Positions 956 through 16,104 of a stretch of 16,104 nucleotides of DNA are shown here, in pieces. Under the pieces are notes generated by a model, which made no database searches, was not told the DNA's origin, and saw only the letters and a list, made by a program, of their open reading frames with translations. Origin of the DNA: Octopus sinensis. Its lineage: Eukaryota. The stretch's first letter is position 1. Every line of letters begins with the position of its first letter. The translations under genes and the position numbers were made by a program. The DNA lies in assembly GCF_006345805.1 (NCBI RefSeq), contig NW_021825300.1, forward strand, positions 1 through 16,104, read 5' to 3'.

Positions 956-1564
956 TTGATATTTAAGGTATTCCGAGTATTAGAGTATCAACTATGTTTA
1001 TACGATTTGACATATTTTTGGTTGATATCACTAACCACAACAATTGATCTCACTTTGAAATGATAAGGACCAAATCAGCTATTTACCTCTTTTACCAATA
1101 TCAGGAACTTTGAATCACTTGTTCGTAACTCACCTGAAATAATTAGTCCATGCTACCCCTGAATCAACAGAATGCTGAAGCGATGCCGGAGTATGCTGTA
1201 GTTTGCTTCAATCTTTGGGATAAATTTCAAAAGACGTTTATGAAATCATAAGCTTCATCTAGGAATATACGAAAAACCTTTTGATGTGAAGACCTCGATT
1301 CCTTGCAACTCGAATTAATCCATTTACAACACATATAACCCCCTGCAGGTTCTTAAACACTTGCAATAGACACATAGACTGTGGTAGCTCGACCTGCACG
1401 AAATAGCTGCCAGATTTTATTCAACTTACACCCTGTTATTTTAATAAAAGGATGATGTCTCTGATACGCAGAAAGAAAGATGAGTTTTATCGATCGGAGT
1501 GAATGGAATATTGCTTTTAGATTTTTGCACAAGACCAGGATTTCGCGTGGAGAGGCAAGTAGTT

Positions 1565-1725
1565 TGCATCGACTCCAGTCCTCAACTGGTACATATTCTA
1601 TCGAACCCGAAAGGATAAAAAAAACAAAGTTGACCTCGGCGAAATTTGAACTCAGAACATAAAGACGGGCGAAATTCTGCTAAGCGTTTTACCTGACGTG
1701 TTAACGACTCTGCCAAGTCGCTGTC
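1565..1725 (-). mobile_element. SINE-B, older diverged copy (tRNA-like head plus core)
   Basis: Homologous to 15580-15727 (atcgac..ccag...aactggtac...cgaaaggat...gacctcggcg..atttgaactcagaac...ctaagc...taacga.tctgcca). Confidence 0.85.
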
Positions 1726-3331: not shown

Positions 3332-3753
3332 TTACTCTCTTTTACTCTTTTACTCTTTTACTTGTTTCAGTCATTTGACTGCGGCCATGCTGGAGCACCG
3401 CCTTTAGTCGAGCAAATCGACCCCGGGACTTATTCTTTGTAAGCCCAGTACTTATTCTATCGGTATCTTTTGCTGAACCGCTAAGTGACGGGGACGTAAA
3501 CACACCAGCATCGGTTGTCAAGCAATGCTAGGGGGACAAACACAGACACACAAACACACGCACATATATATATATATATATACATATATATACGACAGGC
3601 TTCTTTCAGTTTCCGTCTACCAAATTCACTCACAAGGCATTGGTCGGCCCGGGGCTATAGCAGAAGACACTTGCCCAAGATGCGACGCAGTGGGACTGAA
3701 CCCGGAACCATGTGGTTGGTAAGCAAACTACTTACCACACAGCCACTCCTGCG
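3332..3753 (-). mobile_element. SINE-A, full length (tRNA head, CORE-like domain, internal microsatellite, 3' domain, short-repeat tail)
   Basis: Minus strand: A-box-like tggctgtgtgg, B-box ggttcagtccc, CORE-like tcttgggcaagtgtctt, tail (gtaaaaga)n. Collinear with four other copies in the window. Confidence 0.92.
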
Positions 3754-4012
3754 TAAAATAAACGTAAAATATTTTCATTACTACTGTTTTAATTTTCGTC
3801 AAGTTGAGTTTTTCTCTCTGTTGCAGATGTATGTCATTTTATATCTCTAATACCACTTCGTTTGAATGATCTCTTGCATTTCTGAATGAATGTTTGTCAT
3901 ATGAGTTTCTCGAAGGCCACAGCAAACGTTTCAGAATATCTTAAAGAATATCTGATGTGTTGCTTGAATTATGAATACAGTGTACAATTTCCGCAAGTTA
4001 TCAATAGGTGTG

Positions 4013-4453: not shown

Positions 4454-4701
4454 TTCTTTACTCTTTACTTTTTTTACTTGTTTCAGTCATTTGAGTGCGG
4501 CCATGCTGGAGCACCACCTTTAGTCGAGCACATCGATCCCGGGACTTATTCTTTTGTAAGCCTAGTACTTATTCTATCGGTCTCTTTTGCCGAACCGCCG
4601 AGTTACGGGGACATAAACAATCTAGCATCGGCTGTCAAGCGATGTTGGGGGACAAACACAGACACACAAACATACACACACACACACACACATGTATATA
4701 T

Positions 4702-4777
<76 letters not shown>

Positions 4778-4949
4778 CATATATACGAAGGGCTTCTTTT
4801 AGTTTCCGTCTACCAAATCCCCTCACAAGGCTTTGGTCGGCGCGAGGCTATAGTAGAAGACATTTGCCCAAGGTGCCACGCAGTGGGACTGAACCCGGAA
4901 CCATGTGGATAGTAAGCAAGCTACTTACCACCCAGCCACTCCTGCGCCT
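4454..4949 (-). mobile_element. SINE-A, full length, with expanded internal (CA)n(TA)n of about 115 bp
   Basis: Collinear with 3332-3753 on both sides of the microsatellite; ends ...ccactcctgcgcct. Confidence 0.92.
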
Positions 4950-5121: not shown

Positions 5122-5503
5122 TTTATCCTTTGCTCGTTTCAATCATTAGAGTGCGACCATGCAGGGGCACCGCCTCGAAGTGTTTTGAGTCGAGTGGATG
5201 ACTTCAGGCCCTTCTTTGGTTTCAGGCCTGGTACTTTTTCTTTCGGTCTCTTTTGCCGAACCGCTAATGTTACAGGGATGTAAACATACCGACATCGGTT
5301 GTCCAGTAATGGTGAGCGACAAGCACAGACATAAAGTCGCTCTCACCCCTCCCCCACGAATATATATTCGATGGGCTTCTTTCAGTTTCCGTCTACCAAA
5401 TCCCCTCACAAGGCTTTGGTCGGACTGAGTCTAGAGTAAGAAAAGACACTTCCCCAAGGTGCCACACAATGGGACCGAACTCAGAACCATGTAGTTGGGA
5501 AGT
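5122..5503 (-). mobile_element. SINE-A variant subfamily, diverged, 5' end (A-box) missing
   Basis: Shares tttccgtctaccaaatcccctcacaaggctttggtcgg and ttttgccgaaccgcta with other copies; has ggggcacc and a different linker in the tail region. Confidence 0.85.
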
Positions 5504-6262: not shown

Positions 6263-6306
6263 GTGAAGCTAATATTCAAATAACCGGAAGAAGCGGTCTG
6301 ACACTA

Positions 6307-6355
6307 AAATACAAATAATAATAATAATAATAATAACAACAACAACAACAACAAC

Positions 6356-6393
<38 letters not shown>

Positions 6394-6498
6394 TAATAAT
6401 AATGATAATAACAACAACAACAACACAACAACAACAGCAATAATAATAATAACAATAATAATAATAATAATAATAACAACAACAACAACAACAACAGC

Positions 6499-6542
<44 letters not shown>

Positions 6543-6558
6543 TAATAATAATAATAAT
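6307..6558. repeat. Compound trinucleotide microsatellite (AAT)n/(AAC)n with GAT/AGC variants
   Basis: Direct inspection; explains the poly-I/L/Y/C ORFs in the track. Confidence 0.97.
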
Positions 6559-6584
6559 GGTCATATATGTACATATATATATCA

Positions 6585-6725
6585 AAAGAGAGCGCGACAA
6601 TAGGGATGAGTGATAAGTGAGTGAGAGAAGGAGAGAGAGGTGGGAGAGAAAGAAGCATAAAGGGAAGAAGGGAGTAAAGGGAGAAAGAAAGAAGGAGAGA
6701 GAGGGGAGGGAGGTAGGGAGAGTAT
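6585..6725. repeat. Polypurine (GA-rich) low-complexity tract
   Basis: Almost pure A/G on the + strand. Confidence 0.85.
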
Positions 6726-7390: not shown

Positions 7391-7608
7391 TCTTTCCTCT
7401 TTTATTTGTTTCAGTCATTTGACTGCGGCCATGCAAAGAACACTGCCTTTTAGTTGAATAAATCAACCCCAGGACTTATTCTTTGGAAACCTAGTACTTA
7501 TTCTGTCGGTCTCATTTGCCGAACCGCTAAGTGACGGGAACGTAAAGACACCAACATCGGTTGTCAAACGATTGTGAGGACAAACACAACCGCACAAATA
7601 CATTCTAT

Positions 7609-7657
<49 letters not shown>

Positions 7658-7809
7658 GACGGGCTTCTTTCAGTTTCCGTCAACCAAATCCACTCAGAAG
7701 CCTTTGGTTATAGTAGAAATTACTTGCCCAAAGTGACACGCAGTGGAACTGAACCCGGAACCATGCGGTTGAAAAGCAAGCTTCTTATCACACAGCCACT
7801 CTTGCGCCT
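7391..7809 (-). mobile_element. SINE-A, full length, small internal deletion in the core
   Basis: Collinear with 3332-3753; ggtcggcccggggctatag is reduced to ggttatag. Confidence 0.92.
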
Positions 7810-8170: not shown

Positions 8171-8304
8171 GGAGGGGAAACAAAGAAATGAAAAATAAGT
8201 GGATAGAATTACCAGTTTATTTGTATGTTACAAAAAAATGACATTTAAGAAAAATAACAGTGAAAATAAATTGGTTAGAAGTTGAAAGTTGAAAGAAAAA
8301 TATA

Positions 8305-8451
8305 TATTTCTTTACTACCCACAAGGGGCTAAACACAGAGAGGACAAACAAGAACAGACAAACAGATTAAGTCGATTACATCGACCCCAGTGCGTAACTG
8401 GTACTTAATTTATCGACCCCGAAAGGATGAAAGGCAAAGTCGACCTCGGCG
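8305..8451 (-). mobile_element. SINE-B young-type module, 5'-truncated, standalone
   Basis: Near-identical to the reverse complement of 10535-10679, including the unique tail (..tttagccccttgtgggtagtaaagaaata). Confidence 0.92.
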
Positions 8452-10180: not shown

Positions 10181-10452
10181 TTTTTTCAGATTTGCTGAAA
10201 CGGACCAGCATGCAGTTCAAGGTTGACGTTGTGATCTCGGATACTTATACGACCCGAAACCCTAAGGCTCAGGAAGTATGAAGTAAAAGTAAACATGGAT
10301 ACGATTGATTTTGTCAGGTTCAAAGATCACCATTCACTACCGTCGACAATGTCTTCATTTTTGAAATTATTTGAATTATTATAAAGTAGAATTATTAAGT
10401 CAGTGCGTCGGACAAAATGTTCTACGTTATTTCTCCCGGACATTTTACGTTC

Positions 10453-10868
10453 GCGAACTGGCAGAATCGTTACCATGCTGGATGAAATGCTTAGCGGTAT
10501 TTCGTCTGCAGTTACGTTCTGAGTTCAAATTCCGCCGAGGTCGACTTTGCCTTTCATCCTTTCGGGGTCGATTAAATAAGTACCAGTTACGCACAGGGGT
10601 CGATATAATCGACTTAATCCCTTTGTCTGTCCTTGTTTGTCCTCTCTGTGTTTAGCGCCTTGTGGGTAGTAAAGAAATAGGTATTTCGTCCGTCTTTACG
10701 TTCTGAGTTCAAATTCCGCCGAGGTCAGCGTTGCCTTTCATTTTTTCGGAGTCTATAAATGAAGTATCAGTAAAACACTGGGGTCTGTCGTTGTAATTGA
10801 CTAGCCCCCTCCCAACAAATTTGAGGCCTTGTACCTATAGTAGAAAGAATTATTAAATAGAATGTAAT
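10453..10868 (+). mobile_element. Composite SINE-B: head + young 184-bp module + older body and tail
   Basis: GGTATTTCGTC at 10496-10506 and 10680-10690; B-box gagttcaaattcc appears twice; flanked by a 55-bp perfect direct repeat. Confidence 0.9.
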
Positions 10869-11025
10869 AGTCAGTGCGTCGGACAAAATGTTCTACGTTA
10901 TTTCTCCCGGACATTTTACGTTCTGAGATCAAATTACGCCGTTGTCAACTTTGCATTTTATCTTTATGGAGCCGATATAAGAAAGTATTTGTCACATACT
11001 GGACTCAGTGTAATCGGACAGCTAA
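10869..11025 (+). mobile_element. Oldest host SINE-B; its first 55 bp are also present at 10398-10452
   Basis: gcgtcggacaaaatg...ttacgttctgagatcaaattacgccg..gtcaactttgc.tttt.atc aligns to the SINE-B head, B-box and core with many changes. Confidence 0.75.
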
Positions 11026-11206
11026 CGATAAGAGTGATATTCTCCCCTTTTGTACGGCACAATAAATATTTTCTATTGCGAAGGTTTAGAGGTGTCTTAA
11101 GCTCGATTGATGATCAGGTATTTAGTATCAGTCATATTCCATGGCATATACGTCGACGTAGTACGTAAACTCGTACTATAAACATTCAAACATCATCACA
11201 TCAACC

Positions 11207-11402: not shown

Positions 11403-11585
11403 GATATTAGCAATTATCGCCAAGCTAATACGACAGTTCAAAAACATAGGACTAAAGCTGCCGCTGATTAGCTCCAAGAGGCCATATAGCTAGCTAGAGG
11501 TGATGACCTCTTAGAGCTAATCAACGGCAGCTTTAGTCCTATATTTATGGACTGCCATATTAGCTTGGCGATAACTGTTAATATC
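11403..11585. repeat. Long ungapped inverted repeat: 83-bp arms (11403-11485 / 11503-11585), 17-nt loop
   Basis: Base-by-base comparison gives 10 differences and no indels between the arms. Confidence 0.95.
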
Positions 11586-11969
11586 AATATATCTTCCTTT
11601 GCTGTAAATTTCTGAAAAATTTGACTTGTATTCTGGAAAATACAAGCTATGACTGAGTGAACTTACTGTCCAAAGCATTCCAGCCATGCCCATCCTACAT
11701 TCTTGTCTATCTAGGGACTACTTCTTCAACATCTTGCACCTTTTTTTTCACTTCATGGTGTTGCCATACTTTCCAATATACAAATCGAAGTAGTGTATAG
11801 TAAAAACATTCAAACATTGTCACCAACTTTCCAAATCCTGCTGAATTTCACACGGAACATTTGGTCCTCCAAAGTTGACTTGGTGTATAAGTCGACCTAC
11901 CTGTCTTGGCTGTAAATTGTAATCAGAAACATTCGAATTGCTGGGAAATACAACCATTCCTGTTCAAGG

Positions 11970-12352
11970 CTGACAAAGAAGCTTGAGAGGCGGTTGGATG
12001 GAACCTACACTCGCCTCCTTATGAGAGCTCAAAATCTCTCGTGGAAGCGCCATCCAACCAAAATGCAAATATATGGGAAACTACCACCTGTGTCATCTCT
12101 TGTGAAAGGTAAGAGAGTCCAGTTTACTGGACATTGTTGTAGAGCTGAAAAAGAGGTAATTTCTACTCTTCTCCTCTGGAAGCCATCTACCCGTAATACC
12201 AGAGGGCGCAGACTTTCCTACCCTCATGTAATCTCCAGGGATACAGGCATCCAGCAACAGGACCTCCGTAATACTATGATGGACCGTGAAGTCTGGCGTA
12301 GCATGGTAAATTCCAGTGTCTCGACCACGGTCGTACAATGATGAAATGATGA
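11970..12352 (+). mobile_element. 5'-truncated RTE-clade LINE: open ORF C-terminus plus (TGA)n tail
   Basis: LTKKLERRLDGTYTRLLMRAQNLSWKRHPT...RVQFTGHCCR...LLLWKP...DREVWR matches the RTE post-RT C-terminal pattern (LD G.YTRLL...SW...GH..R...W...DR..WR). Stop at 12339-12341 runs into tgatgaaatgatga. Confidence 0.88.
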
Positions 12353-13699: not shown

Positions 13700-14035
13700 A
13701 GGCGCAGGAGTGGCTGTGTGGGAAGATCTTCCTTCCTAACCACATATATGTATGTATGTATTATGTATGTATGTATGTATGTATGTATGTATGTATATGT
13801 TTGTTGTTTCTGTGTTTTGTCCCCGCCTACCACCAACCACCACCACCACCAACCATCACTTGACAACCATTGTTGGTGTGTTTATGTCCCCGGAATCTAG
13901 CGGTTCGGGAAAAGGGACGATAAAATAAGTACTAGGCTTACAAAGAATAAATCTTGGGATCGATTCCTTGGACTAAAGGTGGTGCTCCAGCATCGCCGCA
14001 GCCAAATGACTGACGAACGTGAACATATAAAAATA
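13700..14035 (+). mobile_element. SINE-A with B-box and core deleted (head joined directly to (TATG)n), extra (CCA)n, diverged tail
   Basis: aggcgcaggagtggctgtgtgg...aaccacat, then microsatellite, then cttgacaacc...gcggttcgg...aataagtactaggcttacaaagaataa...ggtgctccagcat.gccgcag.caaatgactga. Confidence 0.85.
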
Positions 14036-14262: not shown

Positions 14263-14304
14263 TATATATGTCTTCAAAAATCTATTGTAGACAAAAACTT
14301 GAAA

Positions 14305-14483
14305 AGTTGGGGGCCAGTGGGTTACTTCGACCTCATTGCTCAGTTTGCGCTCAATTCATCGATCGCAAAACGATGAAATAGAAATTCGACCTGAGCGGCA
14401 TTTGAACTTAGAACGTAAATTCGGACGAAATGCCGCTAAGCAACTTTTTCCGGCTTGCTAACGATTCCGCCAGCTCGCCGCTT
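14305..14483 (-). mobile_element. SINE-B, head well preserved, core diverged
   Basis: atttgaacttagaacgtaaa...gacgaaatgccgctaagca...gctaacgattccgccagctcgccgc matches 15652-15727. Confidence 0.8.
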
Positions 14484-14494
14484 TATTTCTAATG

Positions 14495-14836
14495 CAGTAA
14501 TCCGTTGTCCTATCGCGGTTCACCTATCGCGGTTTATTATTTAAGCTCACTTCGCTTCCTCTGTTGTTTTGCATTTATAATAAAATAACTCTCTTTACTC
14601 TACTTTTTTACTCTTTTACTCTTTTACTTGTTTCAGTCATTTGACTGTGGCCATGCTGGAGTTCCCGCCTTCAGTCGAGCTCATCGACCCCAGGACTTAT
14701 TCTTTGTAAGCTTAGTACGTATTCTACCGCTAGGTTACGGGGACGTAAACACACCAGCATCGGTTGTCAAGCGATGTTGGGGGAACAAACACAAACACAC
14801 AAACATACACACGCACACACACACACACACACACAC

Positions 14837-14893
<57 letters not shown>

Positions 14894-15150
14894 GACGGGC
14901 TTCTCACAAGGCATTGGTTGGCCCAAGGCTATAGTAGAAGCCACTTGCCGAAGGTGTCACGCAGTTGGACTGAACCCGGAGCCATGTAGTTCGTAAGCAA
15001 GCTACTTTCCACACAGCCACTCCTACGCCTATATACAAATTATAAAAAAAATATATATATATAGAGTACTGTAGTGTTTCTACTTCGCGGATTTTCACCT
15101 TTCGCGAGGAGTTTTGGAACTGAACACCTATGATAGTCCACGAATTGCTG
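14495..15150. mobile_element. Degenerate Tigger/pogo-like MITE interrupted by SINE-A (14590-15030)
   Basis: Left end cagtaatccgttgtcctatcg versus reverse complement of right end cagcaattcgtggactatca (about 15 matches in 20, one gap); TA at 15151-52, TG at 14493-94; internal tcgcgg..cacct.tcgcg motif near both ends. CAGT ends and TA duplication are typical of this group. Confidence 0.5.
14590..15030 (-). mobile_element. SINE-A, both ends present, two internal deletions
   Basis: Collinear with other copies but lacks tcggtctcttttgccga and ttcagtttccgtctaccaaatcca. Confidence 0.9.
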
Positions 15151-15152
15151 TA

Positions 15153-15729
15153 TTATTAATAATACTGGTTTCAAATTTTGGCACAAGGCCAGCAATATCG
15201 GGTGAGTGGATAAGTACTCAGCTGGTACTTATTTTATCAACTCCCAAAGAGATGAAAGGCAAATCAACCTCGGCGGAATTTGACCTCAGAACGTAAAAAT
15301 TGACGAAATACCTATTTCTTTATTACCCACAAGGGGCTAAACATAGAGGGGACAAGCAAGGACAAACATAGGTATTAAGTCGATTACATCGACCCCAGTG
15401 CGTAACTGGTACTTAATTTATCGACCCCGAAAGGATGAAAGGAAAAGTCGACCTCGGTTGAATTTGAACTCAGAACGTAGCGGCAGATGAAAAATACCTA
15501 TTTCTTTATTACCTACAAGGGGCTAAACATAGAGGGGACAAACAAGGACAGACATAGGTATTAAGTCGATTACATCGACCGCAGTGCGTAACTGGTACTT
15601 AATTTATCGACTCCGAAAGGATGAAAGGCAAAGTCGACCTCGGCGGAATTTGAACTCAGAACGTAGCGGCAGACGAAATACCGCTAAGCATTTCGCCAGG
15701 CGTGCTAACGATTCTGCCAGCTCGCCCTT
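15153..15729 (-). mobile_element. Composite SINE-B: head + two tandem young 184/186-bp modules + older body and (ATT) tail
   Basis: Junction motif (gacgaaatacc on +) ends at 15312, 15498 and 15682; spacings 186 and 184. Confidence 0.92.
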
Positions 15730-16104
15730 GTATTCCGAATATTATTAATAATATTAATATAAATTCTTATATTAACATTGATCAAGGCGAAAGATGCTTT
15801 ACTATTTAAGATGGCTGTTGTTGAAATTTTACTGCAACAATGGCTGCAATAGAAGCGAAATAGAATAACAAAATTAGATGAACCAACAGTGGAATGTCTT
15901 CATTGATATATCCTGTGAGGGAGGGGGGAAGGGAAAGAAGATCGTCCCATCTATCTTTCTTCTCAACCGGAATAAATCCCTTCCCGAAGCTCCCCATTAC
16001 TATGTTTCCCTAATTGAATACCAAAGCATTTATCTAGATCTCCCTTACCACCCGCCTCCCCTCTTTTATGATGGCAGATACATAATTTGTTTTAGCCCTT
16101 CCTC

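What the first reader, a model, noticed from the sequence alone, without database searches (positions are those of the whole stretch)
10496..10690. 184-bp SINE module that occupies the same 11-bp site inside other SINEs (SINE-in-SINE targeting)
The module (B-box + core + unique tail ..gtgggtagtaaagaaata) is bounded by GGTATTTCGTC on both sides (10496 and 10680, 184 bp apart). The identical architecture recurs independently at 15302-15682 (minus strand, two modules). The downstream host bodies differ (tail ..ggccttgtacctatagtagaaagaattatt versus ..ggccttgtgccaaaatttgaaaccagtattatt), and the modules belong to different sub-variants, arguing against one dimeric master. The site lies between the A- and B-boxes, so each insertion restores a correctly spaced Pol III promoter and puts the new tail first, in effect taking over the host's A-box. 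The standalone copy at 8305 abuts a weakly similar tatatttttc. Possible mechanisms (inference): 3'-end microhomology-primed TPRT, or excision and reintegration of a 184-bp circle. I know of no description of this but cannot search.
Basis: partly seen in the sequence, partly recalled or inferred. Interest (0 to 1): 0.75.

Follow-up and report, generated by a model that had tools for sequence, protein, structure and literature searches.

The report
Head-less SINE units chained at one motif
In DNA that looks like an octopus's, a short retroposon (SINE) is followed three times, always at the same 11-base point, by head-less copies of related SINEs; the pattern is real, but copy-choice at a shared hairpin/terminator motif explains it better than a SINE that hunts other SINEs, and 16 kb cannot settle it.

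Summary
GGTATTTCGTC occurs exactly four times (10496, 10680 on +; 15302, 15672 on -), always inside tRNA-headed CORE-type SINEs. A 173-nt module body with the tail CCTTGTGGGTA[A/G]TAAAGAAATA sits between these sites in a dimer (10453-10868, +) and a trimer (15151-15727, -). The downstream units belong to three subfamilies. All three start exactly at GGTAT.

The interpretation, a module that integrates into an 11-bp site in resident SINEs, is not shown.
- The 11-mer is the whole 3' arm of an 11-bp hairpin in the SINE head.
- It contains TATTT, a minimal Pol III terminator.
- The one stand-alone module (8305-8451) is not in a SINE, yet it carries TATTTTT at the same offset after its tail as trimer unit B1. 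The start of the "target" therefore seems to travel with the module.
- The whole dimer is flanked by a perfect 55-bp duplication of another SINE's head. That is a genuine nested insertion, with a complete head, a long duplication and no use of the 11-mer.

My best reading (confidence 0.4) is that the units are joined at the RNA/cDNA level by reverse-transcriptase template switching at the hairpin and terminator homology, then inserted as one unit. No further octopus sequence was reachable, so a genome-wide test remains open.

The parts
10453..10495 (+). Head of dimer A: tRNA-like, with A-box-like TGGCAGAATCG. Its 3' part, GATGAAATGCT, forms the 5' arm of the hairpin.
   Evidence: no tRNA called by ARAGORN
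10496..10506 (+). First GGTATTTCGTC of dimer A. It is the 3' arm of the head hairpin and contains TATTT.
10507..10679 (+). Module A1: 173 nt with B-box-like GAGTTCAAATTCC, a CORE-like region and the tail ..CCTTGTGGGTAGTAAAGAAATA.
10680..10690 (+). Second GGTATTTCGTC. This is the junction between the module tail and head-less unit A2.
10691..10868 (+). Unit A2: a head-less SINE of another subfamily, with tail ..GGCCTTGTACCTATAGTAGAAAGAATTATTAAATAGAATGTAAT. It has an internal T6 at 10741-10746.
10398..10452 (+). Left copy of a perfect 55-bp direct repeat. It is the first 55 nt of an X-type SINE head and is read as the target-site duplication of dimer A.
   Evidence: 55/55 identical to 10869-10923
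10869..11050 (+). X-type SINE into which dimer A inserted. Positions 10869-10923 are the right copy of the 55-bp repeat. Its 11-mer equivalent, GTTATTTCTCC, was not the insertion point.
15683..15727 (-). Head of trimer B (GGGCGAGCTGGCAGAATCGTTAGCACGCCTGGCGAAATGCTTAGC).
15499..15682 (-). Unit B1: GGTATTTCGTC (15672-15682) plus a 173-nt module ending ..GTAATAAAGAAATA.
15313..15498 (-). Unit B2: degenerate GGTATTTTTCATC (15486-15498, contains TATTTTT) plus a 173-nt head-less module of the same sub-variant as B1.
15151..15312 (-). Unit B3: GGTATTTCGTC (15302-15312) plus a head-less SINE of a third subfamily, with tail ..GGCCTTGTGCCAAAATTTGAAACCAGTATTATTAATAATA. A T5 run starts 2 nt after the 11-mer.
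8295..8451 (-). Stand-alone module, 5'-truncated at CGCCGAGG inside the B-box. Its tail ends at 8305 and is followed by TA+TATTTTT (8296-8304). It is not inside a SINE.
1540..1722 (-). Free full-length SINE of the B3-like subfamily. Its site is AGAATTTCGCC.
14290..14480 (-). Free full-length SINE of the A2-like subfamily. Its site is GGCATTTCGTC.

Best explanation
**What the elements are.** They are ordinary tRNA-headed, CORE-type SINEs of several subfamilies.

**What the 11-mer is.** It is not an integration target. It is the 3' arm of a hairpin in the SINE head and contains TATTT, a minimal RNA polymerase III terminator.

**Proposed mechanism.**
1. The module subfamily carries GGTATTT(TT) after its tail. 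Its Pol III transcripts therefore end ...AAAGAAAUAGGUAUUU, which is the same sequence as the start of the 11-mer in every SINE head.
2. A LINE reverse transcriptase copies some SINE RNA from its 3' tail. It finishes the 3' arm of the hairpin and reaches the loop.
3. The nascent cDNA end (...GAAATACC-3') is released there and re-pairs with the 3' end of a module RNA.
4. Copying continues up that RNA. It either switches again at the next 11-mer or runs out through the head.

**Product.** One retrocopy, [head-11mer-module]-[11mer-unit]n, with every internal unit head-less from exactly GGTAT and one target-site duplication around the whole.

**Shown:** the anatomy, the exact junctions, the predicted hairpin, the TATTT motifs and the 55-bp duplication.

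**Inferred:** the RNA 3' end, the template switch, and one-event insertion.
For: 1. All three internal units (A2, B2, B3), from three subfamilies, begin at the same nucleotide. The 7 nt after the 11-mer are unit-specific: cgtcttt, tgccgct and aattttt.
2. The upstream partner is the module type in 3 of 3 junctions. In the window, units of other types outnumber it 6 to 4.
3. In both heads the 11-mer is the complete 3' arm of an 11-bp hairpin (GGCGAAAUGCU/GGUAUUUCGUC, -13 kcal/mol). The junction falls at the boundary between loop and arm.
4. All four module tails are followed at +3 to +7 by TATTT. B1 and the free copy 8305 both have TATTTTT there. The free copy's flank matches GGTATTTTTC at 8 of 10 positions, with a chance of 0.0008 per position. 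TATTT itself occurs at 0.0043 per position.
5. TATTT stops Pol III in 42-50% of transcripts in mammalian assays, and T-runs in SINE terminators lengthen with age (PMC8466645).
6. Dimer A is bracketed by a perfect 55-bp duplication. A single recent event is more economical than two successive recent hits at one locus.
7. There is precedent. LINE-made bipartite and tripartite chimeras, including a SINE, are flanked by one duplication. Their switches recur at the same nucleotide next to predicted hairpins (PMC2104539). Template switching is also the accepted route to composite SINEs in molluscs (PMC4824008 and PMC4758252).
Against: - There are only two composite loci and one free module, and the model was built after seeing them.
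- The free copy has TA where GG is expected.
- Its T-run could instead be part of a low-complexity duplication: TTTTCTTTC also lies 10 nt upstream of its 5' end.
- The hairpin is not significant against shuffles (z = -1.5; 15 of 200 shuffles fold as well).
- Three switches in about nine passes through an 11-mer would be a very high rate. This suggests composites also multiply as units, or are made in place.
- The trimer's outer duplication is unclear: TATTATTAATAATA appears on both sides, but 12 nt away from the head.
- In the fungal precedent no homology was found at the switch sites.
- Pol III terminator strength in octopus is unknown.
- No partner LINE with this tail was found.
Confidence: 0.4

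Rival explanations
1. In-place, site-directed insertion. A module RNA is reverse-transcribed at a nick beside the 11-mer of a resident SINE. Its 3' end pairs with the 11-mer. The 5' end is resolved by homology with the resident head. One head-less unit is added, and the 11-mer looks like an 11-bp target duplication.
For: - Identical 11-mers flank module A1 and the outer trimer units.
- Orientation is the same in 3 of 3 junctions.
- Three of four module tails in the window lie inside SINEs, as targeting would predict.
- In dimer A the module keeps 10 of 10 conserved CpGs. The head plus A2 have lost 4 of 11 (Fisher one-sided p = 0.055). This would fit a younger insert in an older host.
Against: - It needs exact 5' resolution in 3 of 3 cases.
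- The perfect 55-bp duplication shows that the putative host at locus A is itself very young. The module would therefore have had to hit a brand-new host.
- The one certain nested insertion here (dimer A into SINE X) ignored X's 11-mer equivalent, kept its full head and made a 55-bp duplication.
- No free SINE head in the window has GGTATTT.
- The CpG contrast is confounded by unknown subfamily consensus sequences.
- No site-specific LINE was identified.
Confidence: 0.2
2. Composite master genes. A tail-to-11-mer junction arose once or a few times. Dimeric or trimeric SINEs then multiplied as whole transcripts. The 3' units were later exchanged by homologous template switching or gene conversion within the shared 11-mer/B-box/CORE region.
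For: - Composites are frequent: 3 of 4 module tails.
- Dimeric SINEs and SINE multimers are common elsewhere (PMC8466645 and PMC10702118).
- There is a single duplication around dimer A.
- In the 11-mer-to-CORE region, A2 and B3 are closer to the modules (82-84%) than to the free copies of their own tail type (70-76%).
Against: - The two loci have different architectures and different 3' subfamilies.
- The subfamily-specific sequence starts immediately after the 11-mer in every unit. Random crossover points within about 90 nt of homology would not predict this.
- As they stand, both composites contain strong Pol III stops before their last tail: T6 at 10741, TATTTTT at 15496 and T5 at 15299.
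Confidence: 0.2
3. RNA cut-and-ligate before reverse transcription. A nuclease cuts SINE RNAs in the anticodon-like loop, just 5' of GGUAUUUCGUC. It also cuts at the look-alike GAAAUA|GGUAUUU after the module tail. A tRNA-type ligase (RtcB) then joins a module 5' piece to a head-less 3' piece, and the ligated RNA is retrotransposed.
For: - The junction lies at a loop/arm boundary of a tRNA-like hairpin.
- The tail GAAATA is the reverse complement of TATTTC in the 11-mer, so the junction mimics the head hairpin.
- RtcB-made U6/L1 chimeric RNAs are retrotransposed in human cells (PMC6789731).
Against: - The evidence is purely by analogy.
- The tail/11-mer mini-hairpin is not favoured in folding (z about 0).
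- No evidence exists for such cleavage.
- It does not explain TATTTTT after the free copy any better.
Confidence: 0.08
4. DNA-level tandem duplication, by unequal crossing-over or replication slippage between the head GGTATTT and the GGTATTT after the tail. This would be an early SINE-derived satellite.
For: - B1 and B2 belong to the same sub-variant, are 93-95% alike and adjacent, with a 186-bp period.
- Squamate SINE-derived satellites show a longer terminal unit reaching the SINE end (PMC10702118).
Against: It cannot by itself join a module to units of two other subfamilies (A2, B3) at the same nucleotide. The arrays are only 2-3 units long.
Confidence: 0.08
5. Excision and reintegration of a 184-bp circle.
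For: Only the direct repeats bounding the unit.
Against: - No ribozyme, recombinase site or other RNA-family hit lies in the unit.
- The free copy is a 5'-truncated linear retrocopy.
- Every feature is explained by retroposition.
Confidence: 0.02

Closest known systems
LINE-made chimeric retrocopies (bipartite and tripartite; Magnaporthe WEIRD/Mg-SINE/MGL chimeras; mammalian U6-L1 chimeras)
   Same: - Copies of different RNAs are fused directly, in the same orientation, with one target duplication around the whole.
- Double switches occur.
- Switches recur at the same nucleotide of the template, next to predicted hairpins (PMC2104539).
   Different: - Here both partners are SINEs of one superfamily.
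- The acceptor is always one subfamily.
- The donor and the acceptor 3' end appear to share 7 nt (GGTATTT). The fungal sites showed no homology.
Dimeric and multimeric SINEs (Alu; B2, Dip and B1 multimers; colugo and armadillo tRNA-SINE dimers and trimers)
   Same: Head-to-tail SINE units are frequent in some genomes. Up to 49% of Dip copies are in multimers (PMC8466645; PMC10702118).
   Different: In those cases the units are full-length, or the dimer is one fixed master. Here every internal unit lacks the same 43-45 nt of head, and the partners vary.
SINE-derived satellites of squamate reptiles
   Same: Tandem units are cut from part of a SINE, with a longer terminal unit that reaches the SINE end. 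The period is about 150-190 bp.
   Different: Only 2-3 units occur here, the units come from different subfamilies, and the loci are dispersed.
T+ SINEs (B2, Dip, Ves), with a polyadenylation signal and a short Pol III terminator at the 3' end
   Same: AATAAA or AGTAAA lies 9 nt before TATTT after the module tail. TATTT and TCTTT are the minimal terminators of those families, and their T-runs grow with age.
   Different: No A-tail follows the terminator here. The other subfamilies end in ATT-rich tails.
Sequence-specific non-LTR elements and their SINE-like derivatives (R2, the Dong/R4 group on TAA repeats, the Tx1 group on small-RNA genes). This comparison rests on my own knowledge.
   Same: The insert sits repeatedly at one nucleotide of a repeated target, in a fixed orientation.
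   Different: - Those elements insert whole or randomly truncated copies.
- They are driven by a target-specific endonuclease.
- They are found at the target regardless of homology between element and target.
- None of these points could be shown here.

Membership tests
tRNA-derived CORE-type SINE | Internal Pol III promoter: A-box and B-box in a tRNA-related head | tested here: met
   TGGCAGAATCG (7 of 9 specified A-box positions) and GAGTTCAAATTCC (B-box-like) lie 62 nt apart. ARAGORN calls no tRNA, so the head is only tRNA-like.
tRNA-derived CORE-type SINE | Central CORE domain shared with MIR/OR-type SINEs | tested here: inconclusive
The reference is not curated. The literature says tRNA-Core SINEs dominate in octopus (PMC8967140).
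tRNA-derived CORE-type SINE | Dispersed copies with 5' truncation and target-site duplications (retroposition) | tested here: met
   At least 8 dispersed copies on both strands. There is one 5'-truncated copy and a perfect 55-bp duplication around dimer A.
Site-specific retroelement (targets the 11-mer in SINE DNA) | Independent insertions at the same target nucleotide, with target sequence (not element sequence) on both sides | tested here: inconclusive
   Three junctions fall at one nucleotide. However, the flanks are homologous to the element's own head, so target and element cannot be told apart. The free copy suggests that the first 7 nt belong to the element.
Site-specific retroelement (targets the 11-mer in SINE DNA) | Pre-integration (empty) sites are intact targets, here monomeric host SINEs | not testable with these tools
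   No second genome, haplotype or further octopus sequence could be reached.
Site-specific retroelement (targets the 11-mer in SINE DNA) | Other insertions of the same kind of element use the site when it is available | tested here: not met
   Dimer A inserted into SINE X 16 nt downstream of X's 11-mer equivalent, with a full head and a 55-bp duplication. The caveat is that its priming tail is A2-type, not module-type.
Template-switch chimeric retrocopy | One target-site duplication around the whole chimera | tested here: met
   Met for dimer A: 55 of 55 identical, 10398-10452 and 10869-10923. Unclear for trimer B.
Template-switch chimeric retrocopy | Downstream part 5'-truncated, upstream part ending at its RNA 3' end, same orientation, no filler | tested here: met
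   The claim that the module RNA's 3' end lies in the T-run is an inference.
Fixed dimeric SINE family (one master) | Same partners and co-divergence of the two halves in all copies | tested here: not met
   The two loci have different downstream subfamilies and different module sub-variants. With n = 2, several masters remain possible.
Retrozyme-like or circular-RNA element | Self-cleaving ribozyme in each tandem unit | tested here: not met
   No ribozyme hit lies in 8295-8451, 10453-10868 or 15151-15727 at E up to 1. The only hammerhead-like hits (25 bits against a gathering score of 52) are at 11440-11548, outside the SINEs.

The most novel reading that the evidence does not exclude
The module is a head-less parasite of other SINEs. 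It has no promoter of its own. It integrates, by homology of its terminator-bearing 3' end, precisely into the anticodon-arm hairpin of resident SINEs of any subfamily. It takes over their A-box and places its own tail and terminator first. This would be a retroelement whose genomic niche is other SINEs.
Probability: 0.15. Interest if true: 0.75.

Novelty: new variant of a known kind. Interest (0 to 1): 0.4.

Why it matters
If the terminator/hairpin reading is right, one short motif does three jobs. It is an arm of a promoter-region hairpin, a Pol III stop, and a recombination point.

That would give a simple rule for two known processes:
- how SINEs swap bodies and tails, the "jigsaw" evolution described in molluscs;
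- how SINE multimers and SINE-derived tandem arrays start.

Octopus genomes are more than 10% SINE. A rule that predicts where units join could be tested on hundreds of thousands of copies. It would also improve repeat annotation, which at present splits such composites.

If in-place targeting is right instead, it would be a rare case of a retroelement specialised on another non-autonomous element.

Tried and rejected
**Getting more copies from outside the window (all failed)**
- The antisense SINE ORF had no homologue among 5.8 billion proteins.
- The LINE ORF in the window (11994-12338) found only unnamed ENA, JGI and Logan contigs.
- The three long contigs fetched (L001-L003, 55 kb, sample ERZ25072740) contain no copy of the SINE.
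- The closest hits sit on 0.6-6 kb metagenome contigs, some from TARA Oceans, that hold only the LINE.
- DNA pattern scans of viral, JGI metagenome and GTDB genome collections gave nothing, apart from one chance hit in an archaeon.
- The exhaustive HMMER search plus cluster look-up gave no named protein, so the organism could not be confirmed by a tool.
- No paper in the library contains these sequences.

**Tests that did not decide**
- Head identity as a host-or-donor test.
- Folding of the whole head as a cloverleaf (z = -1.2).
- Folding of the tail/11-mer junction (z about 0).
- A CpG-decay comparison (p = 0.055, confounded).
- The bacterial promoter/terminator scan is irrelevant to this DNA.
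- TRF does not see the dimer as tandem, because A1 and A2 are only 82% alike over the shared part.

**Rejected**
- That the roughly 25 nt of similarity upstream of the two 55-bp repeats extends the duplication. It has two indels and several mismatches next to 55 perfect bases. It is better read as two related SINE tails.
- That the RTE-type LINE at 11900-12341 is the partner. It ends in ATG-type repeats and shares no tail with the SINEs.

Full report
**What the window is**

The window is AT-rich (36% G+C), full of microsatellites, and has no tRNA genes. Its only Rfam matches are low-complexity noise. It carries many short retroposons and a 5'-truncated RTE-type LINE fragment. From memory, the repeat families look like those of Octopus. 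The literature says tRNA-Core and tRNA-Deu SINEs dominate octopus genomes, at about 11.6% of O. vulgaris (PMC8967140; PMC13282606). No tool result could confirm the organism.

**Checking the observation**

GGTATTTCGTC is exact at 10496 and 10680 (+) and at 15302 and 15672 (-), and nowhere else. The tail CCTTGTGGGTA[A/G]TAAAGAAATA occurs four times, against none in 200 shuffles. In a multiple alignment, with coordinates checked, the anatomy is as follows.

- **Dimer A (+):** head 10453-10495, 11-mer, module A1 (173 nt), 11-mer, unit A2 to 10868.
- **Trimer B (-):** head 15727-15683, 11-mer, B1 (173 nt), GGTATTTTTCATC, B2 (173 nt), 11-mer, B3 to about 15151. TRF reports a 186-bp period with 2.5 copies.
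- **Sub-variants:** A1 and the free copy at 8305-8451 are one sub-variant. B1 and B2 are another.
- **Downstream units:** A2 and B3 have different tails. Each resembles a free full-length SINE elsewhere in the window, at 14290-14480 and 1540-1722 respectively.

**What the 11-mer is**

All SINE subfamilies here share a tRNA-like head, a B-box-like GAGTTCAAATTCC, a CORE-like centre and a ..GCCTTGTG.. box before divergent tails. In the heads of A and B, the 11-mer is the complete 3' arm of an 11-bp hairpin (GGCGAAAUGCU-UUAG-...GGUAUUUCGUC, -13 kcal/mol). Head A keeps all eleven pairs despite two base changes. This is not significant against shuffles (15 of 200).

The unit boundary falls exactly between the loop and the 3' arm. 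The 11-mer also contains TATTT. In mammalian assays TATTT stops Pol III in 42-50% of transcripts. It is the usual minimal terminator of Dip and Ves SINEs, and such T-runs lengthen with age (PMC8466645).

**The free copy is the most informative datum**

The copy at 8305-8451 is a typical 5'-truncated retrocopy. It starts inside the B-box and does not lie in a SINE. After its tail comes TA-TATTTTT-C. Unit B1 has GG-TATTTTT-C at the same offset, and A1 and B2 have GG-TATTT-CGT.

- A 10-mer within 2 mismatches of GGTATTTTTC occurs at 0.0008 of window positions.
- TATTT occurs at 0.0043 of positions.

This suggests that NNTATTT(TT) is the module's own 3' end, its terminator. If so, the first 7 nt of the supposed target travel with the element. 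There are two caveats. TA replaces the expected GG. And the T-run could belong to a low-complexity duplication (TTTTCTTTC), whose other copy lies 10 nt from the 5' end.

**A built-in control**

Dimer A is flanked by a perfect 55-bp direct repeat, 10398-10452 and 10869-10923. This repeat is the first 55 nt of another SINE, called X here, which continues to about 11050. This is a genuine SINE-in-SINE insertion:

- the head is complete;
- the duplication is long;
- the insertion point is 16 nt past X's 11-mer equivalent (GTTATTTCTCC).

The perfection of the repeat (0 differences in 55) shows that the event is young. If the module had entered a host in place, it would have had to hit a host that had itself only just arrived. 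One event is simpler.

**Best explanation (confidence 0.4)**

The chain is built on RNA/cDNA during one retrotransposition.

1. A LINE reverse transcriptase copies a SINE RNA from its tail and finishes the 3' arm of the head hairpin.
2. At the loop the nascent end (...GAAATACC-3') comes free. The displaced 5' arm has the same pairing potential and can push it off.
3. The free end pairs with the 3' end of a module RNA that terminated in its TATTT(T) run (...AAAGAAAUAGGUAUUU).
4. Copying continues until the next 11-mer, where it can switch again, or until the 5' end of the head.

This accounts for five features:

- the nucleotide-exact junctions;
- the loss of the same 43-45 nt in every internal unit;
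- the fact that sequence immediately after each 11-mer is unit-specific;
- the upstream partner always being the module type;
- the single duplication around dimer A.

There is close precedent. In Magnaporthe, LINE-made bi- and tripartite chimeras, including Mg-SINE, carry one duplication. Their switch points recur at the same nucleotide next to predicted hairpins (PMC2104539). Template switching is also the accepted source of composite SINEs in molluscs.

**Rivals**

- **In-place insertion primed by the same 3' homology (0.2).** It fits the high share of module tails inside SINEs and the pristine CpGs of A1 compared with its neighbours (p = 0.055). It needs exact 5' resolution every time and a very young host at locus A.
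- **Composite masters (0.2).** These fit the frequency of composites. However, the two loci differ in partners. Both also contain strong Pol III stops before their last tail: T6 at 10741, TATTTTT at 15496 and T5 at 15299.
- **RNA ligation by a tRNA-type ligase after loop cleavage (0.08).** It has a precedent in U6/L1 chimeras (PMC6789731) but no direct support here.
- **DNA-level tandem duplication (0.08).** It may explain B1/B2 but not the joins to A2 and B3.
- **A 184-bp circle (0.02).** It has no support. There is no ribozyme or other signal, and the free copy is a linear truncated retrocopy.

**Limits**

Everything rests on two composite loci, one free module and four diverged free SINEs. 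All routes to more octopus sequence failed.

**Verdict**

The finding is real and non-random. It is best filed as a new variant of known composite or chimeric SINE formation, with an unusually clear junction rule. It is not a demonstrated case of SINE-in-SINE targeting.

Noticed in passing
window 3340-3756, 4460-4949, 7400-7809, 14600-15030; fragments 5325-5420 and 13918-14032: A second, unrelated SINE family lies on the minus strand. It has a tRNA-like head (..GGCTGTGTGGTAAG..GGTTCAGTCCC..), an internal (TA)n(CA)n microsatellite of variable length, a 3' half and a (TAAAAGAG)n tail. All four full copies share the same two-part layout, so it is a fixed composite.
   Followed up: partly
window 11900-12341 (+); loci L004, L005, L007-L010: A 5'-truncated RTE-type LINE 3' end (115-aa ORF, no Pfam hit) ends in ATG-type repeats. 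Relatives (59-87% aa identity) exist only on unnamed ENA, JGI and Logan contigs, some of them about 3.3-kb contigs from TARA Oceans metagenomes. In L005 the end of one LINE ORF is followed at once by the start of another endonuclease/RT ORF, so two LINE copies lie head to tail.
   Followed up: partly
window 11403-11585: A long inverted repeat has 83-nt arms, 88% complementarity and a 17-nt spacer. It gives only sub-threshold Rfam hits: MIR1435 at 51 bits against 94, and Hammerhead HH9 at 25 bits against 52. It looks like a palindromic, MITE-like element.
   Followed up: no
window 10663-10686, 15306-15329, 15490-15515, 8296-8321: The module tail carries AATAAA (B1, B2) or AGTAAA (A1 and the free copy) 9 nt before TATTT. 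Mammalian 'T+' SINEs have this same layout of polyadenylation signal plus Pol III terminator, but no A-tail follows here.
   Followed up: no
window 10741-10746, 15295-15299, 15443-15446: Strong Pol III stop signals (T6, T5, T4) lie inside units A2, B3 and B2. The composites as they stand could not be transcribed end to end by Pol III from the upstream head.
   Followed up: partly
window 10340-10397 and 10830-10868: The sequence just before each copy of the 55-bp repeat is a similar ATT-rich SINE tail (..GAATTATTATAAAGTAGAATTATTA against ..GAATTATTAAATAGAATGTAAT). SINE X therefore sits directly after an older SINE tail. The nick for dimer A fell exactly at that tail's end, which hints that these elements prefer to insert next to tail-like sequence.
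   Followed up: partly
window 15728-15765 and 15151-15170: TATTATTAATAATA occurs both upstream of the trimer head (12 nt away from it) and at the trimer's 3' end. It may be a TAA-repeat target, as known for Dong/R4-type LINEs, which are reported to be recently active in O. vulgaris (PMC13282606).
   Followed up: no
window 6266-6605 and many other places: Microsatellite load is very high: AAT/GAT arrays, and (TA)n, (CA)n and (TATG)n runs. These produce dozens of spurious miRNA-family hits in Rfam and long spurious ORFs.
   Followed up: no
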